Source of the DNA: Octopus sinensis
Taxonomy: Eukaryota
Length of the DNA stretch: 64,000 nucleotides
NCBI RefSeq assembly: GCF_006345805.1
Contig: NC_043000.1
Coordinates: 85,870,001-85,934,000 of the forward strand
Direction: 5' to 3'
Below, in pieces: positions 23,686 to 52,675 of this stretch. A program made the translations under genes and the position numbers. How positions within the stretch are numbered: the stretch's first letter is position 1; each line of letters begins with the position of its first letter. Under the pieces are notes generated by a model, which was not told the origin of the DNA, made no database searches, and saw nothing but the letters and a program-made list of their open reading frames with translations.

Positions 23686-23735
<50 letters not shown>

Positions 23736-24182
23736 TGTTGCTTTTGAAGACTTCTATGACTTTTTGTTGCCATCCATTTCCATTATTAGGAATTTGATTT
23801 GGGAGCTTGAGTCATTGTGAATCTTTCATTAGCTGATTACACAACCATGGATACCACCCCTATGGATGCATTGCAGTTACTCTCTTGATAGAACTTAGTG
23901 ATGCTGACCGTTGATCCTGACTGCAGGATTCCTCTACTCAGCACCAATGTCAGAAGCACTGTTGGCTCAGTTGAGCTCTTCCGCTACTTCTTCACAATCA
24001 ACCATGCTGCAGTCTCATGACTTTACCATGTCCTGACAGGGTGACTGAAGGGGTGCTATACTTTATTAAAGAGCAGCCCATAACTATCATGCAGGGCATT
24101 GGTTGTCACTCAGTGAGGTATTTTCTAAATACCTGCATACATACATACACACACACATGCACACACACACACACACACACAC
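20979..24182 (+). repeat. Near-identical tandem duplication, 2 x ~1.59 kb, bounded by (CA)n tracts
   Basis: ORF pairs are offset by 1589 bp (21552/23141, 22428/24017). Only two substitutions seen outside microsatellites (21692/23281, 21702/23291). Confidence 0.95.
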
Positions 24183-31896: not shown

Positions 31897-32452
31897 ATAT
31901 ATAATATATATATATGCGTATGTGATCTTTTTCTTGAAGAATGTTGATTATTGATGAAGTTGGCAAAGCAAGAAATAGATTTGATTGTTTGGTTGACCAC
32001 AAAGGAAACTTCAAAACAACGTTTCTCTAATAAATGATAATCAAATCAACAGTGTCCTTCTAAACTTCTCATTTCAATGATACTAAACAATCCATTCTTC
32101 ACATCAGGATCAATATGGCCCTAAAAAAAGAAAGTAGCAAATTAATATCAAATTTATAATCTCATTAAAAAGTTTAATAAATCAACTTAATAATTTATAG
32201 TTTCAATCATTATGTATGCTCCTACCATTAATCAGTTCTTTCAAGTTAATATTTAGCTGTCATACAGAATATGTTTGGGATAATTATTGTATGGTTTACC
32301 TTTATATTCAGGATAATGAGAGACAATTACATTTTCTTTACAGTGAAGGAACTAAAATATATAATGCTTATCAATTTAATAAGAAAAATATTAAATTTTG
32401 CCTCTTGAAGCCTTTCACTAAATTTTATTACATTAAAGAAGCCAATTAAATA

Positions 32453-32970
32453 CTACGTTGAGGAAAAAGTTTGTGTACCGTGTTAAAATAATGATTTTTT
32501 ATGCAAGAATTTATTCAAAAACAACAACATCTATTCTTCAAAATAAAGACCAACATTTTCCAAGACCTTATTTCAATGATAGCAAGCTTTTGGATTTGGT
32601 CAGAGTACCAATCCTTCGGCTTTGAATAAAAAAATTCTTGACAGGCTTCTTCATCTTCATGAAATGACTCAAATTGGCAACCTTTCATAAAGTGCTGCAT
32701 TGATTGGAAGAGACCATAGTCAGATGGAGAAATGTCTGGATTATAAGACTGGATGCAGCAGAACTTCCACACTGTCCAATTCGTCAATCTTGTTGCTGGC
32801 CTTTCTGCCGGTATGTGGCTTTGCATTGTCTTGTTGAAACAAAGTGCGCTTTTGACAAACACAGTGAGTCATCATTGAACATGACATGAACTGAATGAAC
32901 ACACACACCACAAAAATATATAAAAAAAGCATTATTTTAACACGGTGCACGAACTTTTTCTTCCACTTAA
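32453..32970 (-). mobile_element. Internally deleted mariner (DD34D) derivative
   Basis: ~41-bp TIRs (..aaaaagtt.gtg.accgtgttaaaataatg) with TA at 32451-32452 and 32971-32972; retains FQQDNAKPH and YNPDISPSDYGLF motifs only. Confidence 0.85.
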
Positions 32971-33426
32971 TATAAAGAGCTTTGCAAACCTGAATAGCAC
33001 TGATTAAATGTAAACGGTAAGTCTGCACAGTTTCTTGATAGCGTTTCTCTGAATCCTAGGAAGAAAGTGAAATAAATACATACATAAAGAAATTAAGAAA
33101 ATAAATAAGTTAGAGATATTATCATCAATTGGCAGTCTTTAGCCCTGTATTTTTAGTACTATTAACACAAAGCAAAATGTTTATAGCCCAAGGTTTAAAA
33201 ATGGTTTTACTGGGTAGGTAGAGATAAGATAATATGATAAAGTTTGAAATTCTTCTCCAGAAAGCAAAAGACCTTAAGGAAGAAAATAACTGAACAGGAA
33301 ATTTTCCAGCAGAAACAAGTATTTTTGATAGTTTGACATATTTAGGATTATCTAAAAATATTTCAGGGTGTGTATAGCAAGTTGTTCTCTATTTTTAGAT
33401 TGTTTATTGCTTTTGAACTAGAAAAG

Positions 33427-33463
<37 letters not shown>

Positions 33464-33509
33464 TTTCTTTCTTTCTTCCTTCCTTCCTTTCTTTCAGTTG
33501 AATTGAAAA

Positions 33510-34699
33510 TATTTATATGCATTTAAGAGTTGAAATAACTGTGAAGATATATATTATGGCTGACTAATCAATGTGTTGGACTAACAACTTTAAGCTGATA
33601 TTTATCCAGTTTTCCTTTTGCCAAGAATAAAGTTGAAAACTAGGTAACATTGCAATATCAGAATTGAATAGACAACATTAGCAAGACCATCACAGTAACC
33701 AAACAGATATTCTATGAACAAATGCAAATGTTTGAACTCATGGACGGCAGAAATAGAAGTTTTGAATTAGATGCTTTGCAATATGTAATTATATCCTTTT
33801 ACAGAAGCAACATTATCATTTTAATGTCCACTTTTACCATGCTTACATGGGGCAGACAAAGCTTGTTGTGGCAGACTCTCTGCAACCAGATGCCCTCCTT
33901 ATTGCCAACCATCATCTATTTTCAAGAAAGGCAAGATTTCCATAGAAGATAGTGACACTCATAGCATTCATCTGATGTTGAAAGAAATCTCAAACATGCA
34001 TGAATGCATGAATGCATGCGTGCATGCACAGAGGTTTCTTTCAGTTTTCAGTTGCTATCTACCAAATCTGCTTTGGTTAGTTCAATGCTTAGTAGAAGAC
34101 ATTTTCTCAAGGTGTTATGCAATGGTTGGGAACTGAACTGCTTAACCATGCAGTCATGCCTACTCCTCATTCTGAATCCAAACCTTCTAAAATAAACTTC
34201 ATCTTCCTTAATTCATGGGACAATGAAAAGACTATGAGTAATAGGAATATACTGGAACCAATTCCTTTTACCATATTTATTCACTCAAAAATGTTTTATG
34301 CTAAAGTTAGAAACTAATCTTTTTTTACATGGTTATGAGGAAGTAACATAAATGAGTGTTGGACAGAATACTATATCTTTTCTCCTTTGTCTCAGTCATG
34401 GTACTGTGGTCATGCTGGGGCATTGTTTCAAAGGGTTAGTCAAACAAATCGATCCCAGTACTTATTTTTAAAGTCTGGAACTTTTTCTATCGGTCTCTTT
34501 TGCTGAACTGCTAATGTGATGGTCTTGCTAATGTAGTCTATTCAATTCTGATATTGCAATGTTACCTAGTTTTCAACTTTATTCTTGGCAAAAGGAAAAC
34601 TGGATAAATATCAGCTTAAAGTTGTTAGTCCAACACATTGATTAGTCAGCCATAATATATATCTTCACAGTTATTTCAACTCTTAAATGCATATAAATA
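33510..34699. repeat. 185-bp inverted duplication (33510-33694 vs 34515-34699), 820-bp spacer
   Basis: Base-by-base comparison shows 184/185 identity; the right copy interrupts a SINE C. Confidence 0.95.
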
Positions 34700-34918
34700 G
34701 ACAAACCAACAACATTTGTCAAGCAATGGTGGGGATAAACCCCGCCCCCACACACAATTGGCTTCTTTCAGTTTCCATCTACCAAATCAACTCACAAAGT
34801 TTTGGTTGACCTGAGGTTACAGTAGAAGACATTTGCCCAAGATGCCATGCAGTGGGACTGAACTTGAAACCATGTGGTTAGGAAGCAAACTTCTTTACCA
34901 CACAGCCATGCCTGCACT
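34375..34918 (-). mobile_element. SINE family C (reverse), interrupted by the 185-bp inverted copy
   Basis: SINE sequence stops at ..gctgaactgctaa and resumes at gacaaaccaacaac..gtcaagcaatggtgggg. Confidence 0.8.
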
Positions 34919-35264
34919 ATTAGGGAGTTTATTGTTTTGGTTATCTCTATTCTGATTTCTAATATTATCAGGGTTTAACTTACAAAGGTTTGATTTTAGA
35001 GAGTCGCATATTTCCTTGCAAAAAATTGGCATTTTGTCAAGGGTGATGAGTTGGGTAGTGGTGATAGAACCAGTATTTATGAACATGAAAGAAAGCAAAA
35101 ATGTTCAAAGTAAAGATATTATTTAAATTTAAACCCATTATACTACATTCTTAATAATGATAAATTTTTGTGATAAGCGCTTTGGCAGTAAAAAAACAAA
35201 AATTAATGAAAATATATTTCAATGAAAAAATATATTTAATCTTAGCCATAAATGAATTAGAAAA

Positions 35265-35637
<373 letters not shown>

Positions 35638-37945
35638 TGGAGAGATGCCAAAATAAAAAAATCACTGCTGTTGCTGCTACTCACTGCTACCAATCCATAA
35701 ACACAACAATCTTTTCCTCCCATGCAGTTGTTGGAATTCTTCTCCAAGTAACTTGAGGTTTGGGTTTTTGGTTTACTTATATCACTAATGAAATTAGGAA
35801 GGGCTGAACAACACAACTTCTCATTTCTCATTTTCTAAACATACGAGGCTTTTGGTGTTTTGCTTTTACTGGTTAAACTTTATTTCTCTAATTAATAATG
35901 GTGCCAAGAAATAAATTCTTAGGTTTAAGCTGTATGGTTAATACATTTGCTTTCCAACCACATGATTTTAGGTTCAGTTCCACTGCATGTCACCTTGGGA
36001 AGATGTCTTCTATTATAAGTCCTGAGATGACCAAAGCCATGTGAGTGATATTAAATCAAAGTATACAGTACTATAGATCCATTTCAGCTGATGATCACAG
36101 CAATCAGTTTCACATTGGGTATTAGATAACCAGGTATTAGATGACAGATGAGTTAACTAACTCCACATGCTCTTCAGAGATGGAAGGTATGGAACGACTG
36201 TTCTGTGTTATTGAAGGTAAAAAATGTCATATCTGGTTTGTGGGTACTGCAAAGAAAGATGAAACGTCATGGGAGACAATTGAGCAAGGGATTTATTAAG
36301 AGTTATGTCTCTTGAACCCCCAAAACACTTGAGTTGGTTGTAAAATCAAGGGTATTCAGGAAATTAAGGCAAATATCTTAGTCAGCAGTCCATGCAAAAT
36401 CTCAGCTAACAGGATGTATAGAGATGAAATAACATCCAGTAAATGCACCAATTATAAGAATACTACAGCCATTGCTGAGTACAAAATTAAATGATAAGAA
36501 GAATAAAATTGGCATTACTATATTTATTAATTAGTAATGATTGTTTCAATAATTGGTGGAGTTATTACATCAATCAACATGCTGGATTATCTTTATCTTT
36601 TGCTTGTTTCACTCATTAGACTGCAGCTATGCTGGGGCACTGCCTTGAAGAATTTTTAGTTGAATGAATTGACTCCAGTAATTATTCTATTGTTAAGCCT
36701 GGTACTTATTCTATTGGTCACTTATGCTGAACCGCTAAGTCATAGGGATGTAAAAACACAAACACCAATTGTTAAGCAGTGGTGGGGAACAAACACAGAT
36801 ACACTCACACACACACACAACGAGCTTCTTTCAGTTTCCATCTACCAAATCCACTCACAAGTTTTTGATTGGCCCAAGACTACAGTAGGAGACACTTGTC
36901 CAAGGTATCCGAGTGGAATTTGAACTCAGTATGAAAAGATGGATAGAATGCTGCTAAGCATTTTGCCCAGCATGCTAACAATTCTGCAAGCTTGCCACCT
37001 TAACACCATGTAACATTAAATGAAAATGCACTGATGGTTTCTTTGAGACAAGTAACAGAAATTGCAGTGTACATAGCCACCAGATATAAATACAATGAAA
37101 ATCAGAGTAATAAATAACTTTAAGTTGAAGTATTGCCAGAGAAACACATAAGGGGAGGAACCACTGAGACAATGTGTCTAGTTTCTCCTCTATATATGAT
37201 CTCTTACAAACACCTGGGTCACTCATGTTGACAGGTCAAGAAATTGTCTGAATTTATGGTGTACATATATGCCAAAAGAGAAATAAGATGTTCAGATAAA
37301 AGCAGTGGTAATTACTACTATATTCTCAGAATTGCCACAAATAAGTATGAGGGAAGAGGGAGAGAAAAATCTGTAGGAAAGGAAAAAGTAAAAAAAAAAG
37401 CAGCAAAAAAAGAACAATGTAGAAATAGAACCTAAAAAGATAAGAATAAGGACATATATATACATCTGTTTCGTAAACACTGAACCTTACAAAGGAGATG
37501 ACAGAAGACTGAAATATGTGGTGTATTACTGTACTTGAGAAGACCTGCCTACCACAATGGAACTGAGATCCTAAAACCAAGGTGCCACATAAAAAGCATT
37601 GATGTGGGTGCTGATGTCATGTAAAAACTACTGGTGCTGGTGCTATGTAAAAAGAACTGGTAAATGGCACAAGAATGCTTTTAACTCATTGATTGTCATA
37701 ACAGCCTCCTCTAAGAATGGAAAGTGAGCATGATTAGAGGTCTTATTCTTTCTGAGAAGCAAGGATCCCAGTTGGAATAACAAGTAAACAGACTCATAAT
37801 ATGAGACAGGGGCTGTTTATTAATTGCTACTGGTATATAAGCAGAAATAAATGTGAGAGTGTTAAGATCTAATTCACTGGGTCATCTATCTAAATAAGTG
37901 AACATGCCTTTCATCTTGTTGTCATGAATAAGACTCTTTATAATT

Positions 37946-38220
37946 TCACTTGTTAAGGTCATCTCTATAGATTTTCTATAGAAATTATAGCCAGCACTAA
38001 TTTTGTTACAACATTTTGTATGTCAGTATGCCTAATGCAAACAACATTGAGATTGAAGATGAAAAATGGGTAATGTATACTACAAAGTCTATTACCCATT
38101 TTTCATCTTCGATCTCAATGTTGTTTACATTAGGTGTACTCAGATATGAAATGTCGTAACAAAATCATCAGTGTTGGCTATAATGTCTATAGAAAATCTG
38201 TAGATAACCTTAACAAGTGA
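37946..38220. repeat. Foldback/hairpin element, ~130-bp arms, 16-nt loop
   Basis: Left arm 37946-38074 pairs with right arm 38091-38220 (inner gagattgaagatgaaaaatgggtaat / attacccatttttcatcttcgatctc). Confidence 0.9.
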
Positions 38221-38751
38221 TGTAATAGCACTGCTAACACAGTAGAACACAGTGTTCACTTATGAAAGCATTTAATATACTTTGTAGAATATCATGGTTG
38301 CATAATGAAATACAGTGTCCCAACAGGTCATTAATCTTTATAATTTGTTCCAAATCTTTAAAAACCATTTGTAAGACTGGAACTAAAACGTTCAATTTCA
38401 AACAATTGACTATATATCTAAAAAGACAGAAATATTTCATCATTGAAATAGAATGCAATGCAGCAGATTAGCATTGAGTTGTTAATAGTTTTAGACTAAC
38501 ACTAATCTCTTTTTGCTGTTATTGTTAATGATATGTATTAGTGTATTATGCTGATCACTTGTCTTGACAATATCTTTTCTGAGAATTCTACTCATTTCCA
38601 ATAAATAAACTTAGATTAAGGGAACTTGTAATGCAGATTTAAAATTGATTTGAGAAGATTTTTGATGGATTAATTTTTAGTTCAGCCAGAGAGCAAATCT
38701 CTAAGTTTGGTTGGTAGTGGGGCACTAACTCATATATTAACAAACAAATAT

Positions 38752-39117
38752 TTTTACTCTTTACTTGTTTCAGTCATTTTGACTGCGGCCATGCTGGAGC
38801 CCCACCTTTAGTTGAGCAAATTGATCCCAGGACTTATTCTTTGTAAGCCTAGTACTTATTCTATCGGTCTCTTTTGCCAAACCGCTAAGTTACGGGGACG
38901 TAAACACACCAGCAATGTTGGGGGGACAAACACAGACACACAAACACATATATACATATATGATGGGCTTCTTTCAGTTTCTGTCTACCAAATCCACTCA
39001 CAAGGCTTTGGTTGGCCCGAGGCTATAGTAGAAGACACTTGCCCAAGGTGCTACACAGTGGGATTGAACCCGGAACCATGTGGTGGTAAGCAAGCTACTT
39101 ACCACACAGCCACTCCT
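38752..39117 (-). mobile_element. SINE family C, near full length (reverse)
   Basis: Colinear with 13035-13478. Confidence 0.9.
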
Positions 39118-41018
39118 GAAAAAGAATATCAAGAATGCTTGTTGAACAGTCATAGAGTATGAGGAAACATATTTGATCATTAGGACAGTCTTTTAATTCT
39201 GGCTTTAGTTCACAAATAGTTTTAATTCTAGTTCACTATATTTCTTGATTGGCCCATTGAAATGAACTGAATCATACACTTGTAGTTGTATTCAGCAATA
39301 TTAGGTTATGTACAATTGATTCAGAAATATCATGCCAATGTCCTTTTAAAGAATTCCATGAATGACTAAGTCAATGAGAGAGTCTTTGTCTACAAGGGGT
39401 AAGTACCTCAAGAGGCAAGTACCTCAAAAAGGTTAGAACTGCTCATAGTTCTTTTGGGGATCTACAGAATTTTGAAATGTGTTCCTATTTCTTACTCATG
39501 AAACAAGTAATAAAGTGGATTGTGATCATGCAATGAAAATTTCCCATAGAAATAAAGCCTTTAACCTGCAACAAGGGGCAGTTACACAAGAAGAAGCTTA
39601 TTTAGAAGTTTGACTTGTAGAATTCAAAAGTTCTCCTTAAGCCACTTCACAAGGTAACTGCACTATTTTCTATTTGTATGGCAGAGTCATAGAACTGAGA
39701 CTCTTTCTTGGTATTTATGAAGCATGAACCTGATTTATGGTTGAAGTAACAGTTAAAGTTTTGTTTTCCAGTAGCTTGTTTCATATAGAGACCTAAGGGA
39801 GCTGGTTGTGAATGAATGGAAATATATTCATCTTTTTATACGTCAGCCATTACATTTTTGAAGTTACAATCTAAGACATATTTCTAACCAGGTCTTACAT
39901 ACATCCCAACAGATTCTATTGTCAATTGTTTGCAAGAGATGATCTTGTGTACTACTATGGCATCCTTTGTCAATTAAATAAAGCCAATTTTAAGCAGTTA
40001 AAGCATCATTGTGAACAACATATTAAAAGATTATTTAAAAATTATTTTGGTTTAACAAAGTTTGCTAGTAGTCCCTGATAAGAGCCACCAGTCCATTCAA
40101 GAATAGATTTATACTGAGTAAAGCAAACAGTCAATGCTTAAAGGTGTGTAAAACTTCAGGAGCTGTTGAAGCTGCTTCAAGTTCTTTCTCATATTATAAT
40201 TCCCGCTCTGTTTTCATGTTTTCATGATTACAATTTTTAGTAAATTAAATGGAAAGGTGAGTCACTGAAGATGAGAGATATTGGTAGAATAATATAATCA
40301 GTGGTTTACAAGAGTATTTATAGTAGTAGTAGGTACTAACTGTTGAATTTTGTGGTGATTTAGTAACCATTTCTAATCTTATATAAAACATTATTTACAT
40401 AGAATTGTAAAAATATGAAATCTTGCTATTTAAAAAAAAATGTTAATTGAAAGTGTACAAAAATGTTTATTGAAACTGTGTAAAAATATCTATTTTGTTA
40501 AATCTTCTGTAACAAATGGTATTAACTACATTAACAACTTGTTTCATAATTGCTTAAAGAGATCAGGAATTGTGAGTAATAATCAATGACAAGGTGAAAA
40601 TATTTTTAGCATATATGTTGTGGATGTGTAAAATACCGAACAATATCATCATTTTATTTGTTATTCGTCATAATATCTATTTAAATATATATTATGTAAA
40701 ATATATTTTATATCTTTATTGGAAATTTTTCTAGAACATTATCTTTTTATTTATGGCATAATCACTAAAGGTATTAAACATAATACAAAGTGTAGCCAAA
40801 AATCTCCCAGATTCTTCATTCTTGGCCATGTAAAATGTAGGAAGGTTTTTCTGCCATAGTCTTTAACTGTATCATTTTTAGCTTTTAAAGCACTTTGAGA
40901 GGTAATCTTGAGCTGGAAGCTTAGGATTACTTTTTCTACCAACTTGGCCAACCCATGTCAATAAAGAAAGCATATCTATTATGATATACTTGACTATGAG
41001 AGTATCCAGTTTTATGTG

Positions 41019-41083
<65 letters not shown>

Positions 41084-41422
41084 GAGAAATTATTATCCTC
41101 ATTAATGTTTTTATATCTGCTCATCCAAGGACTGGACGTTTATAAAATTGCCTCTATCTTGTCTACACACATTTCCTTTACAGGCTTTCATTCCTCTTAG
41201 GTCACTCCTACCATGATAGTTCTTGGTTATCTTAGATTTGCATCCGTTAAGAGTGTGAACTCCCAAATGACCTACAATATTTAAGTACTAATTTATATTT
41301 TTATCACTCTCTTTTCCTTCCTCCATCTTTCTCTCTCTCCCTCCTTGTGTGTATGTATGTATGTGTGTGTGGTGTGTGTGTGTGTGTATATATGTATACA
41401 CACACACATATACATACATATG

Positions 41423-41483
<61 letters not shown>

Positions 41484-42284
41484 TGTATATTTATATGTGT
41501 ACATATATACACATAAATATATATACACATACTTGCATGCATGAATGCACACACACACACACACACACATTTCCACTTCAATCAGTGTTGCATTTGTGCA
41601 AATGTATACAAATTAAAGATTCTATTTTTTATGAAGTCACTAATATTCCATAGCTAGTAATGCCTCCAGCATTATAACCAGCACTAAATTAGGTTCTTGT
41701 CAGTGTTCATTTAACTCTGATTGCTGTGAGACCAAGAAGAAACAATGTATAACTGTATTGAATTCGTCTTACTTTATACACAAATGCCAAGAACATTTTA
41801 AAAACTGGCAAAACAAAATTCTTAGATTTTTAACAAAATATATGTAGGTTAAGAAAAATAAATATTTATAATTTTGCTGTGGAATGAAATTTGGAGGAGA
41901 TAAACCCCAAGTTTTTGCAACAATGTGGATTAAGGATTTTTTAATGGCTTTCAGATTAACACCAGCAAGCCAATTTGTACACCCTATGTGAATTAATATT
42001 CTTTTTCTAGAGGGTTGTAAGCTTTTTATTTATTTATACAGGAACTTGAGAGGAACACATTCTGATATGAAATTAAAAGTTCAATACCTGTGATTTTGGT
42101 GAAAACTTATGGGAGATTTTCAACTAACACACACACACACACACACACAACACACACAAACACACACACACACAGACACACACACACACACAGACACACA
42201 CACACACAGAGACACACGTATGTATATGTGTATCTGTGTATGTGTGTGTATGTTTATGTGTGTGCGTGTGTATACATATTCTTT

Positions 42285-42506
42285 TATTTTTTTACTTGTT
42301 TCAGTCATTTGACTGCAGCCATGCTGGAGCATTGCCTTAAAGAACGTTAGTCAGAGAAATCGACCCCAGGACTTATTCTTTGCAAGCCTAGTACTTATTC
42401 TACTGTTCTCTTTTGCTGAATCTCTATGTTATGGGGACATAAACACACCAGCATCGGTTTTCAAGCAATGGTGGGAGGACAAACACAGACACATACATAA
42501 AAATAT

Positions 42507-42595
<89 letters not shown>

Positions 42596-42752
42596 ACAGG
42601 CTTCTTCCATTTTCTGTCTACTAAATCCACTCAAAATTTGGTTGGTCTAAGGATATAGTAGAAGACACTTGCTCAAGGTGCCACACAGTGTGACTGAACC
42701 CAGAACCATATGGTTGAGAAGCAAGCTTCTTACCAAACAACTACACTTGCGC
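42285..42752 (-). mobile_element. SINE family C with expanded internal (TA)n (reverse)
   Basis: Colinear with 13035-13478. Confidence 0.85.
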
Positions 42753-42755
42753 CTA

Positions 42756-42793
<38 letters not shown>

Positions 42794-42901
42794 AAAACAT
42801 ATACACATACAATGTTTTTTTATGGTAAAAAACTTAACAAATTGATACTCAGAGTTTCTAAGCATAACCAATAAACAGAGAGAAGTTTTAGAACAGTACA
42901 A

Positions 42902-43540
42902 TGGTTTACAGATATTTAGAAATATTTTAGTCTTAGATCAGTACTAGCTAAACAGATGTACTTTCAAAGGTGTTCCAGTTGTGAAATTGCTACTTTTACT
43001 TCTGACATAATATTTTGGACAACGTTATCTTATGTGTCCTTTCTTTTAGAAGAAGGTTGGGTGTAACTTGAATGAGATTTATTGGTTATTTCCAATGTAC
43101 AGTGACAAACACTGAGTATCCTTCATTGATGTGGGAGGATTTGTCAGTAACTCAACATCTGAGGCAGGAAGAGAACATTTGCCCAGGATTGAGATTGGTG
43201 AGGGCTTTAAGATGCTTAGCTCCTTTTTGCATGATTGTCCATATTTGTGATAATTAGATAATTCAAATTTATTTTTACTTATAGGATATAAAATATTTAT
43301 TCATATTTTATACTATATAAATTTCTTTTCTAGTTCCAGTAGTGATTCTGCTATGAGAGCCAGGTCATCAGCATAGAGGAGCTCCCAGGGGCATCCTGTT
43401 TTGAATTCCTCTGTTATTGCCTGGAGGACTATGATGAATAAAGGGGGACTGAGCCTTGGTGTACACCTACTTCTACCCGGAATTCTTAACAAGGTTCTTT
43501 CACCTTCTGTCAGCTGGTTTACAGATATTTAGAAATATTT
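42902..43540. other. Templated insertion (587 bp) with 26-bp target-site duplication
   Basis: TSD tggtttacagatatttagaaatattt at 42902-42927 and 43515-43540. Insert = 49188-49579 (forward) + reverse complement of 51192-51044 joined to 49746-49700. Confidence 0.92.
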
Positions 43541-43753
43541 GTAAACCATTGCATTGTTCCAAAAGTTAACTTTTGTTTAATGATCAATTACAAGAAAAAA
43601 AAAAAAAAGTTTACTTTGGTATATGAATGTATTTACTTTATTCACCTTGTTTTGCAGCTATGCACTCACATATACATGTGTTTGTGTGTGTGTGTGTCTG
43701 TATGTATGCATGCATGTATGTATGTATGTGTGTGTGCATATATATATATATGC

Positions 43754-43821
<68 letters not shown>

Positions 43822-43825
<4 letters not shown>

Positions 43826-45488
43826 CGGGTAGAGGTAGGGGGTCCACCAAGGCTCAGTACTCAGCCCCCTCCTATTTATCATAGTCCTCCAGGCAATAAC
43901 GGAGGAATTCAAGACAGGATGCCCTTGGGAGCTCCTCTATGCTGATGACCTTGCTCTAATTGCTGAGTCGCTATCAGAACTGGAGGAGAAGTTTCAGGTG
44001 TGGAAACAAGGATTAGAATCGAAGGGCCTCAGAGTCAATCTAGCTAAAACCAAAGTCGTAATCAGTAGGAAGGTAGACAAATCACAAACACCTTCAGGTA
44101 GATGGCCCTGCTCGATCTGTAGAAAAGGTGTAGGTAGAAACTCTATAAGATGCACCAAGTGTAAGCTATGGACACATAAGAGATGCAGCAATGTCAAAGG
44201 AAGGCTAACTAGGAAGATGGTTTTTGTATGTGGCAGATGCTCAGGAACAATAAACACTGAAAATGCTCTGAGACCAACTTCCGTCACTTTCCAGGGAGAA
44301 AAACTAGAAATAGTTGATAGTTTCCGTTACCTAGGTGACCAAGTCAGCAGCGGGGGCGGGTGTGCTGAAAGTGTAACTGCTAGAGTAAGAATAGCTTGGG
44401 CAAAGTTCAGAGAGCTCTTACCTCTGCTGGTGACAAAAGGCCTCTCGCACAGAGTGAAAGGCAGACTGTATGATGCGTGTGTACGAACAGCCATGCTACA
44501 TGGCAGTGAAACATGGGCCGTGACTGCTGAGGATATGCGTAAGCTCGCTAGAAATGAAGCCAGTATGCTCCGATGGATGTGTAATGCCGGTACTCACACT
44601 CGGCAGAGTGTAAGTACCTTGAGAGAAAAGCTGGACCTAAGAAGCATCAGTTGTGGTGTGCAAGAGAGACGTTTGCGCTGGTATGGTCATGTGGCGAGAA
44701 TGGATGAAGATAGTTGTGTGAAAAAGTGCCACACCCTAGCGGTTGAGGGAACCTGTGGAAGAGGCAGACCCAGGAAAACCTGGGACGAGGTGGTGAAGCA
44801 CGACCTTCGAACTTTAGGTCTCACTGAGGAAATGACTAGAGACCGAGACCTCTGGAAGTGTGCTGTGCGCGAGAAGACCCGGCAGGACAAGTGAGTCCAC
44901 AACCCGTGGCCTTCTACATGGGATGGAGCCAGCCTACGTATGCATACCTTCCCTTCTTGGGACACAAAACTCTACTTGTGAAGACGTGTTGAGGCAAGTG
45001 AGGATCAGAATCGAAATTGATCAATGGAAATTGCGGATGTGCTACCAGTGCCGGTGGCATGTCGAAACTCTGCTTGTGAAGACCCATTGAGGCAAGTGAG
45101 GATCAGAATCGAAATCGATCAATGGAAATTGCAGATGTGTTACCAGTGCCGGTGGCATGTAAGAGAACTTTCCGTTTCGCGACCGTTGCCAGCACCGCCC
45201 CGTTTCGTGTCCGTTGCCAGCCTCGCCTGGCCCTCATGCCGGTGGCACATAAAAAGCACCATCCGTTCGTGGCCGTTTGCCAGCTCTGTCTGGCACCAGT
45301 GCGGGTGGCACGTAAAAAGCACCCACTACACTCATGGAGTGGTTGGCATTAGGAAGGGCATCCAGCCGTAGAAACACTGCCAGATTTGACTGGGCCTGAT
45401 GAAGCCTTCTGGCTTCACAGACCCCAGTAGAACCGTCCAACCCATGCTAGCATGGAAAACGGACGCTAAATGATGATGATGATGATGA

Positions 45489-45492
<4 letters not shown>
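43822..45492 (+). mobile_element. 5'-truncated RTE-clade LINE (copy 1) inserted in (TA)n
   Basis: RT motifs [46 protein letters not shown] (frameshift near 43838; ORF 43998-44894); 3' UTR with tandem modules; (GAT)n tail; (TA)n on both sides. Confidence 0.95.
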
Positions 45493-45550
<58 letters not shown>

Positions 45551-45678
45551 CTATAAATCTTTAGTTAAATATATTCAATGAGAATATTATATATAGAATT
45601 TACATTGAGTGCTCTATTGTATCATAGTATTAATACTATTAAAGTATTTATACATTTAATATGAGCGATTATATATAC

Positions 45679-46078
45679 TATATAATATATTGTTAATAAT
45701 ATCAGGAAATCAATATCAGAAAATTCTTCAGGAAGATATATACATGTGTAGAATATATTTATATTTTTGATAAAAAAACCATTTGATAGATTATACAAAT
45801 TTCACATTTTATACCTCTGAGGAGCAGAAATGTTGTCTATAAATGCTTATCAAATTTAGGATTCCATTATAGGAACAACACTTCTGCGAAACGATCATAA
45901 GATGCTTTAAAATCTTAATTCAAAACTTTTAAACTTTTATTATTATATATTTATACATATTTACATATAATTATATATAGTTATATTTTTAATACAACAA
46001 TTATTCTATACATGTATATATCTTCCTGAAGAATTTTTTGATATTGATTTCCTGATATTATTAACAATATATTATATA
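45679..46078. repeat. 77-bp inverted repeats (45679-45755 / 46002-46078) enclosing a hammerhead-like motif
   Basis: tatataatatattgttaataatatcaggaaatcaatatcagaaaattcttcaggaagatatatacatgtgtagaata and its reverse complement, 2 mismatches. Confidence 0.85.
45810..45905 (+). ncRNA. Degenerate minimal type-I hammerhead ribozyme-like motif
   Basis: CTGAGGA (45817-45823), long stem II gcagaaatgttgt/acaacacttctgc, GAAA (45888-45891), ACGATCAT (one CpG-type change from palindrome ACGATCGT), UA, weak stem I atacct/agatgc. Confidence 0.55.
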
Positions 46079-46124
46079 TATTATAAATGTGTCGAGTGTC
46101 CTTTCATTTGTCCACTCATTCATG

Positions 46125-46171
<47 letters not shown>

Positions 46172-46363
46172 CTTATACATAAATGCCTTGTTATGCTCTG
46201 TTATGCTACATAATTATGTATTATCAACTTAACTGAGTCATATTGAGAATACATACATACATCGCACTCTGAATCAGAGCAAAATTATACATGCTTCAAG
46301 TATATAAATATATTTAGGTCCACCGCCACCCACTGCAACTCTCACTCTCTCTCTCTACTCATG

Positions 46364-46403
<40 letters not shown>

Positions 46404-47575
46404 TGCATGATTGTATTTGTATTAAAATTTATCTAAGAATTGCATTCCAAGTCAGTACCAAAACCATGAATAATTCAGAGTGCTGTTTTCTGGTAATTTT
46501 TGAGAAACTTGAAGTAATGCAATCCTGTGTTAGCTGATATAAAGAAATATATACTTTACAAAATGTATTGACTACTCTTTTCTACCATGTATATGTAAGG
46601 TGGAAGTGGGGTCAGGGGCGAATAGCATTCAATAACCAATTCTGATCAGTACTCTACAGAATACTCAAGTGTGAAAGAAATGGGTGTGGAAGGACGAAGA
46701 GGTAAGTATTAATGATTACACTAGAATACTTAACTGGAAGAAAAGAATAAGGAAAGGAGAAGAAAATGAAAAAGGCCATCATTTGAAATTGGCTGACTTG
46801 TCAGAGGTCATTGCAATAAGAAAGTGGAGTAGTGGTTTCTGTAATGGGTAAGATGCTTGACAGATTGGAACATAATTACATAAGTAGATACCTGTCTAAA
46901 AAACTGAGAGAAAGGCATTTTAGTATATAATACTCATTAATGTAAAGTATAGCAAGATATATTTGTTTATTCTTCTTGTAAGGGCCATTATCTGATTGAA
47001 CAAAAGCACATACACACATATACATACACATCTATATAGTTGAAGTCAAACTGTCCAAGTGCAGCCACTTCCTGCACATTGACCATCCATCTTAGTATAA
47101 GTTTACTTGTCACTGGTCACTTCTGAGACAGCTTATAGTCTAAACAATCATTCACCTCCAACTCATACTGCAAGTTGGACATTTGATCTATTCTAATGGA
47201 TCTTAGTCTATTTGGGTGGCATGCTTTGAGATGGCATTTTAACTCAACCATTTAACAGCATACTTTGCTACATAAGCCACATGGAAGGTCAGATGGGGTG
47301 TTATATTGCTTTTTGGCATCATGAGTAACATGACCCTGTTCCTGGCTGAGCAATGCAAATTTTGAAAGGCATACACAATTATAGACCTGGTATTATAAGG
47401 GACTGTCTAGAGCCCTATTCTAGGAGTGGTACTTCAGCCTTCCTATGTTTCCAGTATGTTTCAATTGTGCAAGCTAAGCACTTGAAGTGATTTATTCACT
47501 TAGGTATTTAAATAATTATGGGTATGTATGTACGGTGAACATTTTCGTTTTTAATAATATCAAATTGTTACTTAC

Positions 47576-48649
47576 TATTAACTCTTGCTGAAGTTGTGAT
47601 ATAAGGACCTTCAGTAATTCGATCTGATTCGATTTCTGTATATCAATCTGTTCCTTCTCTGAACTATTGTTTGGAAGTGTCTGTTGAATGTTGTTATCAT
47701 CTGTAGTTTGAATAGACCTTTCATTTGGCTGGGAGGGGTATAATTGAAGTTGTTCTTGTTGATTAGAGTGTAGTCGAATGCTGCTGTCATTAATATTCTT
47801 GCTATCAAGGCCACTAATATCTTTAGCAGCCACATTTTGTTTTTCAAGCAACAATGATGTATAATTTTTCTCTAACAAGCTATAGTTTTCAATTGCTGCA
47901 TTTAATTTTTGTTTTAGCTCACTGTTTTCATTGAATGATATTTCAAGGTCTTCAATAACATTCTCTTTCTCCAGGAATAATTTTTTGTTTTCATCCCTCA
48001 GTGTCTGCAAATGATTCAATATTATACTTTGGTCTTGTAGAACTTCTGAGCAGCTGTTCAGTTGAATACTTCTTTTTAACCCATCTTCTTCTATCACATC
48101 CTCTGTTTCTGGATTCCTCTGTTGACTCGTTCTTAAATCAGTGTCTGAATGCTTGTTTATTATATTTTGCTTGCCTTGCTCCCAGTTCTCAAAATTAGGA
48201 TTAATAGTTTCAGGGATTTCTTGAATAACATTCTTTGTTTCCAAGGCAGCTATTTCATTTTGGGCTACCCATTTGGTGTTAGTTACCTTTTCAAGGACTT
48301 CTTGCATTTTATCCCGTTCTTCAAGGAGTTTCTCATAATCCTCTTGCAGTATGTCCCCAGCATTGACTAGGTCTTGGTGTTCTTTTTGCAGAAGCAGGTA
48401 ATCTTGTTTGAGTTGTTCAAGTTCCAGTGTTAGTAAGTCATTTTGTTGCTGTATTGGAGATAACTGACTGTCTTGCCCACTGTCAATACTCTCATCAGAG
48501 TCTTTCCTCATAAATCGATTATAAACTTTACTTAATTGAAAAGATAACTGTTCAATTTGAAAGTGCAAGCATTCATTTTTGGCTAGTAGATCATTAACTT
48601 TATCATCTGTAACGAAATCAGCTTGGGTTTCTGAATCTTGGCCCTGATT
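47576..48649 (-). CDS. Internal exon of an unidentified long coiled-coil protein (358 codons, phase 0/0)
   Basis: Open frame within ORF 47516-48676. Strong acceptor ttttctttttcttttcctttcag| before 48649 and consensus donor |gtaagt after 47576. E/Q/L/K-rich heptad-like segments (LLTLELEQLKQDYLLLQKEHQDL). No family motif recognised. Confidence 0.85.
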
Positions 48650-49726
48650 CTGAAAGGAAAAGAAAAAGAAAAACAACAGCTAAATAATTAAATTTTCTCA
48701 CCATTACTAATTATCATATTTTTAGTTTTGGAAAAGAAGGTTACCGAAAAGCTGCAGTTCTATCAATGAAGAACAGAGGAATAAGTATTTTTTAGAGCAA
48801 TCATCTAACAAATGGAAAGATTAGACAGTAAAACATTTCATATTTATTTTAATATTTATAAAATAATTCTTTAACATTATGAAGTCTTTCATCAAGAAGA
48901 TAATAATTTTTGTTAAAAAGCTTAAAACAAAAGAGAAAATTAAGAAAACAATATTGTTGAGTTGAAGTATGTCTTGGTTGGTCCATCTAATTATATGATA
49001 TTTTCACTGATATAATCCCTGACTGTCTTCAGGCACCATGATTTTGCAACAATTCATATATTCCAAGCTGCTATAATTTGACTCCAAATCTTTTAGAGAA
49101 GATTGATCATTCTTTAATTGTTTCTGCATACTCTTTTAATTAATCAATTTTAACAAATGATATATAATTTTATTAAGCATTGCTATTTAGTCTTAGATCA
49201 GTACTAGCTAAACAGATGTACTTTCAAAGGTGTTCCAGTTGTGAAATTGCTACTTTTACTTCTGACATAATATTTTGGACAACGTTATCTTATGTGTCCT
49301 TTCTTTTAGAAGAAGGTTGGGTGTGACTTGAATGAGATTTATTGGTTATTTCCAATGTACAGTGACAAACACTGAGTATCCTTCATTGATGTGGGAGGAT
49401 TTGTCAGTAACTCAACATCTGAGGCAGGAAGAGAACATTTGCCCAGGATTGAGATTGGTGAGGGCTTTAAGATGCTTAGCTCCTTTTTGCATGATTGTCC
49501 ATATTTGTGATAATTAGATAATTCAAATTTATTTTTACTTATAGGATATAAAATATTTATTCATATTTTATACTATATATATATATATATAGGCCTAGGC
49601 TTAGCTGATTCCCAACTATGTGGTTTGAGTTCAATCCTGCTGTGGGCATACATCTTCTACTGCAGCCCTCAGCCAACCAAAACCTTAGGAGTGAATTTAG
49701 CTGACAGAAGGTGAAAGAACCTTGTT

Positions 49727-52531
49727 AAGAATTCCGGGTAGAAGTACGAGGGGCGTTCAATAAGTAATACCCCTGACCCACTTCCCATAGAAGTAGAGCA
49801 ACGAAACTTGGGACAGTTATTAGCCTTTTTCTACATAGGAACCACCCAGAGTTATGCATTTCTCCCATCGTTTGATGCAGCTCTGAAGACCATTTTTGTA
49901 GAAGACCCCAGCTTGGTCCTCCAACCACGACGTGACTTCATAAATCAAGGCTGCATCATCTGGGAAACGCTTTCCTTTCAAAAACAACTTCATGGCTGGG
50001 AAGAGGTGAAAATCAGAGGGTGCAAGGTCAGGAGAGTAGGGGGGATAGGGGATGAGTTCATAGCCGCACGCCTGTGCTTCTGATCTGGCGACACGCGAGT
50101 TGTGGATCGGAGCATTGTCCTGCAGGAGGAGGATGCCTTTGCTGATCTTGCCCCGCCTCTTGATTTTGATAGCTTCTCTTAATTTCCTCAAAAGTGAAGC
50201 ATAATAGACTCCTGTAATTGTGGCACCCTTTGCCAGGAAATCTGTCTTCACTACTCCGTCCTGGTCCCAGAAGACTGTAAGCATGACCTTGCCAGTGGAG
50301 GGCTGCACCCTTGCCTTCTTTGGAGGAGGTGAGTCACGGTGCTTCCACTGCATTGACTGGGCTTTGGTCTCTGGATCATAGTGATGGACCCAGGTTTTAT
50401 CCTATGCAATCAGCCTTTTGAAAAATTTTGACTCATCTTCTTGGCACATCTCCAAATTCATCCTCGAGCAATCGACGCGTTCTTGCTTCTGGAAAGGTGT
50501 GAGCAACCTGGGAATCCATATGGCAGACACATTTTGCATATGCAAATGGTTATGAATGATAGTTTCCACAGACCTGGTACTAATCTTGACCTCATGGGCT
50601 ATTTGGTGAGTAGTTATGCGTCGATCTTCCAAAATGGCAGCTTCAACTTGACAGACAGATGCCTCATCAATTGCAGAAGGGGGGGGCGACCAGATCTGGG
50701 AGCTGTTTCCACAGAGTTCCGACCATGTTTGAATTCATGATGCCAGCGTTTTACAAGGTCATATGATGGGGCATCATCACCATAAGTTACTTTCATTTCA
50801 TCAAAAGTCTCCTGTGGTGTGTGTCCTTTCAAATACAAAAACTGGATCACTGCTCGACACTCAACAGGCTCCATTTCACACTTGACTCAGTTCAAACACT
50901 TGTAAATCGGAAACCACAATTAGTTCAGAGCTGTAATTTGCCACTTAATCTATAGAGATATAAATAATTGCACATGCAAAATTTCAGCTAGATCAAACAA
51001 CTGCAAGTGGGTCAGGGGCATTACTTATTGAACGCCCCTCGTAGGTGTACACCAAGGCTCAGTCCCCCTTTATTCATCATAGTCCTCCAGGCAATAACAG
51101 AGGAATTCAAAACAGGATGCCCTTGGGAGCTCCTCTATGCTGATGACCTGGCTCTCATAGCAGAATCACTACCGGAACTAGAAAAGAAATTTCGGGTGTG
51201 GAAGCAAGGGTTAGAATCAAAGGGCCTTAGAGTAAATGTAGCAAAGACCAAAGTTATAGTAAGCAGAAAGGCGAACTCAGCACACACCCCCTCGGGCAGG
51301 TGGCCCTGCTCGATCTGTAGGAAAGGTGTAGGTAGAAACTCCATAAGATGGACGCATAAGAGGTGCAGCAACATCAAAGGGAAATTAACTGATAGGATAG
51401 CTTTCATGTGCGGCAGATGCACTGGGACAATAGACACCACAGATACTCAGAAAACAGATTCCATCACACCCCAGGGGGAGAAACTAGAAGTAGTTGATAG
51501 TTTCCGCTACCTGGGTGACCAAGTTAGTAGTCGAGGTGGATGCTCAGAGAGTATCACCACTAGAATACGAATAGCCTGGGCAAAGTTCAGAAAGCTCCTA
51601 CCCCTACTGGTGACAAAGGGTCTCTCGCTCAAAGTGAAAGGTAGATTGTATGACGCATGTGTGCGAACTGCCATGCTTCACGGTAGTGAAACATGGGCTG
51701 TGACTGCAGGGGACATGCGTAGACTTGAAAGGAATGAAGCTAGCATGGTCCGCTGGATGTGTAATGTCAGTGTGCATGCACGACAGAGTGTAAGCACCCT
51801 GAGAGAAATACTGGACATAAGAAGCATCAGATGTGGTGTGCAAGAGCGACGCTTGCGATGGTATGGTCATGTACTGCGGATGGATGAGGAGAGATGTGTG
51901 AAGAAGTGCCACTCCCAAACAGTTGAAGGTATCAGGGGGAGAGGTAGACTCAGGAAGACATGGGATGAGGTAGTCAAGCATGACCTCAGAGCGTTGGGCC
52001 TCACTGAGGCAATGGCAAAGGACCGAGATCTCTGGAGATATGCTGTGACTGCAAAGACCCGGGCTGCTTCCTGCACCAGTCCCGCATAGCCCCTGCCCAT
52101 TCAAAGTACCTTGGATTCCAGAACATCCCGCTGTGCTTGAGGAGACCTGTCGAGTCAAGTACATGAACATCGAAATAAATATCAATGGAAATAGCAGTTG
52201 TGATACCTGTGCCGGTGGCACATAAAAAGCACCATCCGAACGTGGCCGATGCCAGCGCCGCCTTGGCTGGATTCCATGCCGGTGGCACATTAAAAGCACC
52301 AACCGATCGTGGCCGATGCCGGACCCCCCTGGCACCTGTGCAGGTGGCACATAAAAAGCACCCACAACACACGCGGAGTGGTTGGCGTTAGGAAGGGCAT
52401 CCAGCTGTAGAAACTTTGCCAGATCAGACTGGAGCCTGGTGCAGCCCCTGGCCTCCCAGACCCCAGTTGAACCGTCCAACCCGTGCTAGCGCGGAAAACG
52501 GACGTTAAACGATGATGATGATGATGATGAT
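49727..52531 (+). mobile_element. 5'-truncated RTE-clade LINE (copy 2, different subfamily), interrupted by a mariner
   Basis: ORF 51007-52089 has LLYADDLAL, FRYLG, RRLRWYGHV. The 5' 20 bp lie left of the mariner. (GAT)n tail followed by (TA)n; 5' junction lies in a SINE C head (~49590-49726). Confidence 0.95.
49747..51041 (-). mobile_element. Full-length mariner transposon (DD34D), 1,295 bp, inactivated
   Basis: 37-bp TIRs cgaggggcgttcaataagtaat(a/g)cccctgacccactt (1 mismatch); TA TSD at 49745-49746 and 51042-51043. Transposase pieces MEPVECRAVI.., WIPRLL, QDNAPIH..YSPDLAPSD (34-residue spacing), broken by a frameshift and a stop. TIR style resembles the irritans subfamily (inference). Confidence 0.95.
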
Positions 52532-52675
52532 ATATATATATATATATATGTATTCTGTAGAAGAGCGTGGGCTCGAAACGTAAAAGACTTTTTTTTATTC
52601 CTGAGTGTTATACTAATACATCTATTTGTTTTGTACACCACCTGTCTTCGTCTTTTGTTTTCTCCGTAAACTCTT

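What the first reader, a model, noticed from the sequence alone, without database searches (positions are those of the whole stretch)
42902..43540. Local non-TE DNA copied 6 kb away with a 26-bp TSD and 5'-inversion (twin-priming) geometry
Seen: a 587-bp insert between perfect 26-bp direct repeats (42902-42927, 43515-43540). It has segment A (49188-49579, forward, 1 mismatch) and segment B (reverse complement of 49700-49746 + 51044-51192, 2 mismatches). B carries the donor's SINE/RTE junction and its private deletion (caaggctcagtccccc), so this locus is the donor. Donor bases 49580-49699 are missing; junction microhomologies are 1-2 nt; there is no poly(A). Read as a minus-strand transcript (the host exon's strand), the layout is TSD, inverted 5' part starting at the internal point, non-inverted 3' part, TSD. 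Established: this is the layout of twin-primed L1 insertions. Inference: host intronic RNA was reverse-transcribed in trans by a LINE (RTE is the obvious local candidate) and inserted back into the same gene. The alternative is polymerase-theta templated insertion with a template switch.
Basis: partly seen in the sequence, partly recalled or inferred. Interest (0 to 1): 0.85.

Follow-up and report, generated by a model that had tools for sequence, protein, structure and literature searches.

The report
Two-piece copy of nearby intron DNA
A 587-bp patch stitched from two oppositely oriented pieces of the same octopus gene's upstream intron was really pasted 6 kb away inside a DNA hairpin site, most likely by error-prone repair or replication and not by a jumping-gene enzyme, though an RNA template cannot be excluded.

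Summary
A 587-bp insert (42928-43514) lies between perfect 26-bp direct repeats. It matches donor 49188-49579 forward plus the reverse complement of 49700-51192, 584/587 identical, with 1-2 nt junction microhomologies.

New findings:
- The split in segment B is a 1.3-kb mariner that entered the donor after the copy was made. The insert keeps its empty TA site.
- The donor SINE is whole and the insert holds only its tail, so the direction is donor to insert.
- The host gene (98% identical to Octopus vulgaris CAI9721300.1) is on the minus strand. Donor and target sit in two introns either side of a 1.07-kb exon.
- The target is the centre of a 72-bp quasi-palindrome. Such hairpins cover 0.27% of the window.
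- The A/B switch lies inside a (TA)9 tract.

The twin-priming geometry holds: both 3' ends copied one minus-sense template. LINE hallmarks do not. There is no poly(A) or RTE (GAT)n tail, the 26-bp duplication exceeds the usual RTE 7-15 bp, and the target is not TA-repeat-like.

Best reading: a structure-triggered, microhomology-primed templated insertion of the MMBIR/FoSTeS/SDSA type. RNA-templated repair remains possible. Endonuclease-driven RTE retrocopying is unlikely.

The parts
42902..42927 (.). Left copy of the 26-bp direct repeat (target-site duplication), TGGTTTACAGATATTTAGAAATATTT
   Evidence: perfect 26/26 match with 43515-43540, chance expectation 0.00.
42928..43319 (+). Segment A of the insert: forward copy of donor 49188-49579
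   Evidence: 1 mismatch (43065 A versus donor G at 49325). Unique in the window apart from the donor.
43320..43514 (-). Segment B of the insert: reverse complement of donor 49700-49746 joined directly to 51044-51191. It holds the SINE tail, the SINE/RTE junction, an RTE reverse-transcriptase fragment with the 7-bp deletion, and an unoccupied mariner TA site.
   Evidence: 2 mismatches (43338, 43388), both derived in the insert judged by the second RTE copy as outgroup. Only 83-85% identical to the other RTE copy.
43515..43540 (.). Right copy of the 26-bp direct repeat
42883..42927 (.). Left part of the pre-insertion 72-bp quasi-palindrome. Its centre is at about 42918-42920, and the perfect inner stem starts at 42899.
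   Evidence: inverted match 42883-42925 with 43525-43567. The empty site folds as DNA at -19.3 kcal/mol, z = -8.3.
43541..43567 (.). Right arm of the same quasi-palindrome, now separated from the left part by the insert
49188..49579 (+). Donor of segment A (unique intronic sequence)
49574..49591 (.). (TA)9 tract in the donor. Copying of A stopped after its third unit (49579).
49580..49699 (.). 120 donor bases not copied: the rest of the TA tract plus the 5' and middle part of a diverged SINE
49602..49726 (+). Diverged SINE copy, continuous at the donor. The insert holds only its last ~27 bp, which fixes the donor-to-insert direction.
   Evidence: 72-78% matches to more than 10 SINE copies in the window, spanning the 49699/49700 breakpoint.
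49700..49746 (+). Donor of segment B, first part (SINE tail plus the first 16 bp of the RTE copy)
49747..51043 (-). Mariner element with a TA duplication, 39-bp terminal inverted repeats (38/39) and a partly broken transposase. It is present in the donor and absent from the insert.
   Evidence: PF01359 Transposase_1, E = 7.7e-22.
51044..51192 (+). Donor of segment B, second part: RTE reverse-transcriptase fragment (YADD motif region) with the 7-bp deletion
   Evidence: (RVT_1).
47576..48649 (-). Host-gene exon (residues ~916-1273 of a 1319-aa coiled-coil-like protein), lying between donor and insertion
   Evidence: dN/dS 0.295 against a related species; CAG acceptor, GTAAGT donor.
32990..33055 (-). 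Penultimate host exon (residues 1274-1295). The insertion therefore lies in the 14.5-kb intron between this exon and the large one.
32049..32120 (-). Last coding exon of the host gene (residues 1296-1319)

Best explanation
This is a genuine, evolutionarily young templated insertion made by DNA repair or replication, not by a retrotransposon endonuclease.

Proposed sequence of events (inferred):
1. A break or stalled fork arose at the centre of a 72-bp hairpin-forming quasi-palindrome in an intron.
2. It left, or behaved as, two 3' ends that shared 26 nt.
3. The ends primed on 1-2 nt of homology and copied a single-stranded stretch of the same gene 6 kb upstream.
4. One end, or one leg of a serial template switch, made 49188-49579 and fell off inside a (TA)9 tract.
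5. The other made 49700-51192, which was 196 bp at the time because the mariner had not yet arrived.
6. The two new strands were joined through 1 nt of homology and filled in. This gives repeat - A - inverted B - repeat.

The event belongs to the MMBIR/FoSTeS/SDSA-with-template-switch class. I take the template to have been DNA.

Shown directly: the structure, the junctions, the direction of copying, the relative timing, the palindromic target and the (TA)9 switch point. Inferred: the nature of the initiating lesion, the polymerase and the chemical nature of the template.
For: - Structure and junction microhomologies of 2, 1 and 1 nt.
- The template lies in cis only 6-8 kb away. A LINE particle assembled on a cellular RNA would have no known reason to return to its source locus.
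- Both nick positions (42901/42902 and 42927/42928) lie inside one of only four non-microsatellite perfect hairpins (stem >= 12, loop <= 20) in 63.4 kb. Together these cover 0.27% of the bases. The empty site folds at -19.3 kcal/mol, z = -8.3, and 0 of 200 shuffles fold as well.
- The A/B switch lies inside a (TA)9 tract. Such tracts cover 2.1% of the window.
- No poly(A), no RTE (GAT)n tail and no LINE or PLE sequence at the insert ends.
- Quasi-palindromes and multi-step direct/inverted template switches are documented features of MMBIR-type insertions (PMC8421209).
- A misassembly is unlikely. The insert differs from the donor at 3 positions and lacks the donor's mariner.
Against: - A perfect 26-bp flanking duplication and the exact twin-priming layout are also what target-primed reverse transcription gives.
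- The polarity of the template equals that of the host pre-mRNA.
- At 587 bp the insert is much longer than typical polymerase-theta or catalogued MMBIR insertions.
- One of the three substitutions (donor T51123 to C in the insert, which is A-to-G on the transcript strand) is of the type that A-to-I editing would leave. One site carries no statistical weight.
- The palindrome test was made after seeing the site.
- A single locus cannot tell a DNA template from an RNA template.
Confidence: 0.55

Rival explanations
1. RNA-templated repair without a LINE endonuclease. The same structure-induced staggered break was patched by reverse transcription of nascent or excised intron RNA of the host gene, tethered nearby. 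The enzyme would be a stray retroelement reverse transcriptase or polymerase theta, both ends priming on the RNA (endonuclease-independent twin priming).
For: - Both segments were copied from a minus-sense template, the sense of the host transcript.
- Donor and target lie in the same transcription unit, which would explain the locality.
- RNA-derived patches at double-strand breaks, including intronic templates, are documented in human cells (PMC5110952).
- One A-to-G-type change on the transcript strand is derived in the insert.
Against: - The polarity match is a 1-in-2 event. It is equally predicted if the R-loop-displaced non-template DNA strand was copied.
- There is no splice junction, no poly(A) and no cluster of editing-type changes.
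- Documented class 2 templated insertions lack target duplications and come from distant loci.
Confidence: 0.25
2. A LINE (RTE or another clade) nicked the target with its endonuclease and reverse-transcribed host intronic RNA in trans, with classical twin priming giving the 5' inversion and the 26-bp target-site duplication.
For: - The target-site duplication, the inverted-5'/direct-3' layout, the 120-nt loss at the inversion point and the 1-nt junction microhomology match the twin-priming model.
- Potentially active RTE elements exist in Octopus (PMC9115989).
- RTE copies flank both loci.
Against: - There is no (GAT)n tail or poly(A) at the priming junction, although every RTE 3' end in the window has the tail.
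- The RNA would be antisense to its RTE fragment, so it lacks the 3' recognition signal.
- Priming would be internal, about 0.54 kb from the intron end.
- The duplication is 26 bp against 7-15 bp for the RTE clade.
- RTE copies here abut (TA)n targets, whereas this site is a complex palindrome.
- Landing 6 kb from the source has no precedent for trans-mobilised RNAs.
- Mobilisation of intron-containing host DNA by Penelope-like elements needs flanking pseudo-LTRs, which are absent (PMC3846280).
Confidence: 0.08
3. Assembly artefact: a chimeric read or a collapsed or misjoined contig created the insert.
For: No read data could be examined. Exact-sequence look-ups of junction-spanning ORFs in public assemblies found nothing.
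Against: - The insert has three private substitutions and lacks the 1.3-kb mariner carried by the donor in the same assembly.
- It is framed by a perfect duplication of a sequence that reconstitutes an uninterrupted palindrome when the insert is removed.
- Chimeras do not make target duplications.
Confidence: 0.03

Closest known systems
Twin-primed LINE-1 insertions (Ostertag and Kazazian 2001; cited)
   Same: - Flanking target duplication.
- One template copied by both 3' ends of a staggered break.
- An inverted upstream part next to one repeat and a direct downstream part next to the other.
- A small loss of template at the inversion point.
- Microhomology at the internal junction.
   Different: - No LINE sequence at all, and no poly(A) or 3' tail.
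- The template is unique intronic sequence 6 kb away in cis.
- Both priming sites are internal.
- The target is a palindrome and not an endonuclease consensus.
- The duplication is 26 bp.
MMBIR / FoSTeS templated insertions and complex template-switch events (PMC8421209)
   Same: - A local template.
- 1-2 nt microhomology at every junction.
- A mix of direct and inverted pieces.
- Association with quasi-palindromes.
- Copy-and-paste, with the donor left intact.
   Different: - The pieces are much longer (392 + 195 bp) than the short insertions usually catalogued.
- The template is kilobases and not tens of bases away.
- The flanking duplication is a clean 26 bp.
Templated sequence insertion polymorphisms, classes 1 and 2 (Onozawa and Aplan; PMC5110952)
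   Same: - Class 1: target-site duplication.
- Class 2: microhomology junctions, no poly(A), non-annotated or intronic templates, and a suspected RNA origin.
   Different: - Class 1 requires poly(A), a cryptic polyadenylation signal and a TTTT/A site. None is present here.
- Class 2 lacks duplications and uses distant donors.
Polymerase-theta-mediated end joining with templated inserts
   Same: 3' ends primed on 1-2 nt of homology, aborted synthesis and re-annealing.
   Different: From general knowledge, not tested here: typical inserts are a few to a few tens of bases, copied from within tens of bases of the break.
Penelope-like element mobilisation of intron-containing host genes (PMC3846280, PMC8557442)
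   Same: Intron-containing host DNA copied with a target duplication, and an inverted 5'-truncated part adjacent to the direct copy.
   Different: Those events are framed by the element's pseudo-LTRs. None is present here, and the duplications reported there are 8-10 bp.

Membership tests
Twin-primed LINE (TPRT) insertion | Insert flanked by a target-site duplication | tested here: met
   26/26 perfect direct repeat.
Twin-primed LINE (TPRT) insertion | Inverted 5' part plus direct 3' part of one template, each starting at a repeat, with a small loss or gain at the inversion point | tested here: met
   Relative to a minus-sense template: inverted 51192-49700, then direct 49579-49188, with 120 nt lost and a 1-nt junction overlap.
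Twin-primed LINE (TPRT) insertion | 3' end of the insert carries the element's tail (poly(A) or a microsatellite-like tail) abutting the duplication | tested here: not met
   The junction reads ...AAATATTT|TAGTCTTAG. There is no A-run and no (GAT)n.
Twin-primed LINE (TPRT) insertion | RNA intermediate (splicing, polyadenylation or editing marks) | tested here: inconclusive
   The template is contiguous intronic sequence, so no splice test is possible. One of 3 substitutions is A-to-G on the transcript strand.
RTE-clade-mediated retrocopy | Template shares the RTE 3' end (...GGAAAACGGACGTTAAAC(GAT)n in this genome) | tested here: not met
   The tail is present at all close RTE 3' ends in the window and absent from the insert. 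The template would be antisense to its RTE fragment.
RTE-clade-mediated retrocopy | Duplication length in the clade's range (mostly 7-15 bp) | tested here: not met
   26 bp here. The range is taken from PMC6007223, which cites Ichiyanagi and Okada 2008.
RTE-clade-mediated retrocopy | Target resembles those of resident RTE copies | tested here: not met
   Three of four close RTE 3' ends abut (TA)n, and one short copy is flanked by (TA)n on both sides. This target is a complex palindrome. The sample is small.
Penelope-like element trans-mobilisation | Captured sequence framed by pseudo-LTRs of the element | tested here: not met
   The insert consists only of donor sequence up to both repeats. 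The requirement comes from PMC3846280.
MMBIR/FoSTeS-type templated insertion | Every junction at microhomology, with no untemplated filler | tested here: met
   2, 1 and 1 nt. All 587 bases are accounted for by the donor.
MMBIR/FoSTeS-type templated insertion | Template nearby in cis, donor left intact, pieces in both orientations | tested here: met
   Donor 6.3-8.3 kb away, intact, with one direct and one inverted piece.
MMBIR/FoSTeS-type templated insertion | Initiation at a replication-blocking or breakage-prone structure | tested here: met
   Quasi-palindrome with z = -8.3, a hairpin class covering 0.27% of the window, and the switch inside a (TA)9 tract. These tests were made post hoc.
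MMBIR/FoSTeS-type templated insertion | DNA (not RNA) template and a replicative or repair polymerase | not testable with these tools
   Needs many loci or experiments.
Class 1 TSIP (L1 ORF2p acting on cellular RNA) | Duplication plus poly(A) 10-30 nt after a cryptic signal plus a TTTT/A site | tested here: not met
   Only the duplication is present. The nick contexts are ATTT/GT and ACCA/TT.
Cut-and-paste or Pack-type DNA transposon capture | Terminal inverted repeats and a fixed short duplication | tested here: not met
   The insert ends (TAGTCTTAG... and ...CTGTCAGC) are not inverted repeats, and the duplication is 26 bp.

The most novel reading that the evidence does not exclude
Host intron RNA, still at or near its gene, served as the template for filling a staggered break in the next intron of the same gene. 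That would be a natural germline example in an animal of transcript-templated DNA insertion in cis with twin priming. The reverse transcriptase could be an RTE enzyme or polymerase theta, and no retroelement RNA would be involved.
Probability: 0.3. Interest if true: 0.75.

Novelty: new member of a known kind. Interest (0 to 1): 0.45.

Why it matters
The locus is an unusually clean fossil of a complex insertion. Every base is accounted for, and the donor, the target, the direction and the relative timing are all fixed: the copy came first, then a mariner entered the donor. It shows that 'target-site duplication plus 5' inversion' is not by itself diagnostic of LINE activity, because the same layout follows from two 3' ends, or one switching end, copying a nearby single strand. 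It also gives a concrete search image: 15-30 bp repeats flanking two opposed pieces of nearby sequence, at palindromes. That image can be used genome-wide to ask whether such events track transcription. If they do, this would bear on the open question of RNA-templated repair in animal germlines. For one locus alone, the practical consequence is small: an intronic insertion in an uncharacterised gene.

Tried and rejected
**Searches for independent copies of the locus**
- The Octopus vulgaris gene model spans 218 kb, so no DNA was returned.
- Exact-protein look-ups of three ORFs found nothing. They were the ORF crossing the A/B junction, the ORF inside A, and the neighbouring RTE ORF.
- The related-species contig L001 stops 70 bp short of the donor.

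**Mechanisms and families rejected**
- Penelope-like mobilisation: no pseudo-LTRs.
- DNA-transposon capture: no terminal repeats.
- Rfam scan of 40-54 kb: only sub-threshold microsatellite look-alikes of miRNA families, nothing in the insert or the donor.
- The 26-mer's partial match at 13846-13871 extends to only 31 bp, so the palindrome is not a recognisable repeat family.

**Tests that could not decide**
- A-to-I editing signature: 1 of 3 changes, uninformative.
- Survey of RTE/SINE duplication lengths in the window: blocked because the elements end in, and insert into, (TA)n. Only one short copy gave a tentative ~8-bp TA duplication.
- Alternative for the missing mariner: the copying enzyme may have skipped across the base of the mariner's 39-bp inverted-repeat stem at the TA/TA repeat. 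This is possible but less simple than a later insertion, and I could not separate the two.

Full report
**1. Observation**

Direct reading and blastn of the region against the window confirm the finding.
- 42926-43319 equals 49186-49579 on the same strand (394 bp, 1 mismatch).
- 43319-43470 equals the reverse complement of 51192-51041 (2 mismatches).
- 43468-43515 equals the reverse complement of 49746-49699 (100%).
- 42902-42927 is repeated exactly at 43515-43540.

The 26-mer has no other match with fewer than three mismatches, and the chance expectation is 0.00. A base-by-base reconstruction accounts for all 587 inserted bases with 584 identities. The overlaps between neighbouring alignments give microhomologies of 2 nt (repeat/A), 1 nt (A/B) and 1 nt (B/repeat). 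There is no untemplated filler and no poly(A).

**2. Which copy is the donor, and when**

Segment A is unique in the window apart from the pair. At 49.6-49.7 kb a diverged SINE (49602-49726, 72-78% identical to more than ten copies in the window) runs continuously across the 49699/49700 breakpoint. The insert holds only its last ~27 bp.

Segment B is 98.7% identical to the RTE fragment at 51044-51192 but only 83-85% identical to the other RTE copy at 43822-43994. It shares a 7-bp deletion with the former. The 49-51 kb locus is therefore the donor, and the repeat-flanked copy is derived.

The interruption of B between 49746 and 51044 is a 1297-bp mariner. It has 39-bp terminal inverted repeats (38/39), a TA duplication and a Transposase_1 match at E = 7.7e-22. 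The insert reads ...GGGTAGAAGTAGGTGTACACC... with a single TA, which is the unoccupied site. The simplest order is copy first, mariner later.

Using the second RTE copy as outgroup, both polarisable substitutions arose in the insert:
- C to T at a CpG (43338).
- T to C (43388).

At 0.5% divergence the event is young. The private substitutions, the missing mariner and the clean duplication make a misassembly very unlikely.

**3. Host gene**

The 386-codon ORF 47516-48676 on the minus strand has a homologue in a related species, P0001 on contig L001. It is 85% identical in protein and 88-91% in DNA, with in-frame indels and dN/dS of 0.295. It is 98% identical to residues 912-1278 of a 1319-aa Octopus vulgaris protein, CAI9721300.1, whose gene spans 218 kb.

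tblastn places the last three coding exons at these positions, all on the minus strand with canonical splice sites:
- 48649-47576
- 33055-32990
- 32120-32049

The earlier exons are not in the window. The donor therefore lies in the upstream intron, about 0.54 kb from its 3' splice site. The insertion lies 4.0 kb into the 14.5-kb downstream intron.

**4. Geometry**

The top strand ending in the left repeat is extended by 49188 to 49579. The bottom strand ending in the complement of the right repeat is extended by 49700 to 51192. Both new strands are plus-sense, so both were copied from a minus-sense template, with the two start points 512 nt apart on it. The first synthesis ran toward the second start point and stopped 120 nt short of it. 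This is exactly the twin-priming layout.

It is also the layout produced by one 3' end that does four things in turn:
1. It anneals at 49186-49187.
2. It copies A.
3. It switches to the opposite strand 316 nt ahead (pre-mariner distance) and copies back.
4. It returns 26 nt behind its point of departure.

The serial model yields a twin-priming-compatible order in either polarity with equal probability. The match to the transcript strand is therefore worth only a factor of about two. It would also be expected if the R-loop-displaced non-template DNA strand were copied.

**5. Tests of LINE involvement**

- Every close RTE 3' end in the window ends in ...GGAAAACGGACGTTAAAC(GAT)n, usually followed by (TA)n. 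Neither junction of the insert has such a tail or an A-run.
- The putative RNA would be antisense to the RTE fragment it carries (RVT_1 is read on the plus strand).
- RTE-clade duplications are mostly 7-15 bp (PMC6007223). This one is 26 bp.
- The RTE copies here sit in TA repeats. This target does not.
- Penelope-like elements can move intron-containing host DNA and often carry an inverted 5' part, but only between their pseudo-LTRs (PMC8557442 and PMC3846280). None is present.
- Class 1 templated insertions made by L1 need poly(A) and a TTTT/A site (PMC5110952). Neither is met.

**6. What the target and the switch point say**

Removing the insert and one repeat restores a 72-bp quasi-palindrome. 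Its arms are about 35 bp at 86% identity, with a perfect 12-bp inner stem. As single-stranded DNA it folds at -19.3 kcal/mol, against -4.4 +/- 1.8 for shuffles (z = -8.3).

In the 63.4-kb pre-insertion sequence only four non-microsatellite perfect hairpins with stem >= 12 and loop <= 20 exist. They cover 0.27% of the bases, and both nick positions fall inside one of them. The A-to-B switch lies three units into a (TA)9 tract, a class covering 2.1% of the window.

Both are DNA structures that stall polymerases and break. Quasi-palindromes and multi-step direct/inverted switches are described for MMBIR-type insertions (PMC8421209).

One way to obtain two 3' ends that share 26 nt (inference): the extruded cruciform is nicked near its base, which leaves both ends with the palindrome as a 3' tail, and each tail is then trimmed. 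These tests were made after seeing the site and should be weighted accordingly.

**7. Locality**

The donor is 6 kb from the target. A cellular RNA mobilised by a LINE particle has no known reason to return to its own gene. Repair and replication errors typically use nearby templates, and a tethered nascent transcript would also be local. On that measure the endonuclease-driven retrocopy model is at a strong disadvantage.

**8. Verdict**

| Reading | Probability |
|---|---|
| Structure-triggered, microhomology-primed templated insertion from DNA (MMBIR/FoSTeS/SDSA with a strand switch) | about 0.55 |
| Same break patched from host RNA, without a LINE endonuclease | about 0.25 |
| Classical endonuclease-dependent LINE/RTE twin priming | about 0.08 |
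| Artefact | about 0.03 |
| Other | remainder |

The attribution to a LINE is not supported. This is a well-preserved instance of a known kind of event. Its value is as a search image for a genome-wide test of RNA-templated versus DNA-templated insertion.

**9. What led nowhere**

- No independent assembly or read evidence could be reached.
- Rfam found nothing relevant.
- The partial match of the 26-mer at 13.8 kb is only 31 bp long.
- The editing-type signature is a single site.
- A within-window survey of RTE/SINE duplication lengths was defeated by the (TA)n tails and targets.

Noticed in passing
49747-51043: A 1297-bp mariner (TA duplication, 39-bp inverted repeats 38/39, C-terminal transposase ORF 49820-50353 on the minus strand, N-terminal half broken) sits inside the donor RTE copy. 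It is younger than the 0.5%-diverged copy event, which suggests recent mariner mobility in this genome.
   Followed up: partly
20979-24182: A 1.6-kb tandem duplication (20979-22593 and 22575-24182, 99.4% identical). Its ends and junction lie in (CA)n tracts, which suggests unequal exchange or slippage between microsatellites.
   Followed up: partly
33510-34699: A pair of 188-bp inverted arms (98.9% identical) separated by 814 bp, with no obvious target duplication, about 450 bp from the penultimate host exon. It could be a long-TIR element or an inverted duplication.
   Followed up: no
43822-45547 and 49731-52550: Two RTE copies only 79% alike begin at the same element position (ATTCCGGGTAGA...), one after (TA)n and one after a SINE tail. 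This points to a preferred 5' truncation point or a truncated subfamily.
   Followed up: no
45459-45547, 52498-52550, 26860-26915, 5440-5489: RTE 3' ends in this genome finish with ...GGAAAACGGACGTTAAAC(GAT)6-9, usually running straight into (TA)n. This suggests insertion into TA repeats.
   Followed up: partly
35170-35830: A long, nearly pure trinucleotide repeat block that gives homopolymeric Ser/Leu/Tyr/Cys/Ala/Thr ORFs in all frames, inside the same intron.
   Followed up: no
38055-38110: A perfect 20-bp-stem hairpin with a 16-nt loop, the strongest non-microsatellite palindrome in the window. It would be a natural control site for palindrome-associated rearrangement.
   Followed up: no
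32049-48649 (minus strand): The last three coding exons of an uncharacterised 1319-aa protein, 98% identical to O. vulgaris CAI9721300.1. The few amino-acid differences suggest the window comes from another individual or a sibling species and not from assembly GCA_951406725.2.
   Followed up: partly
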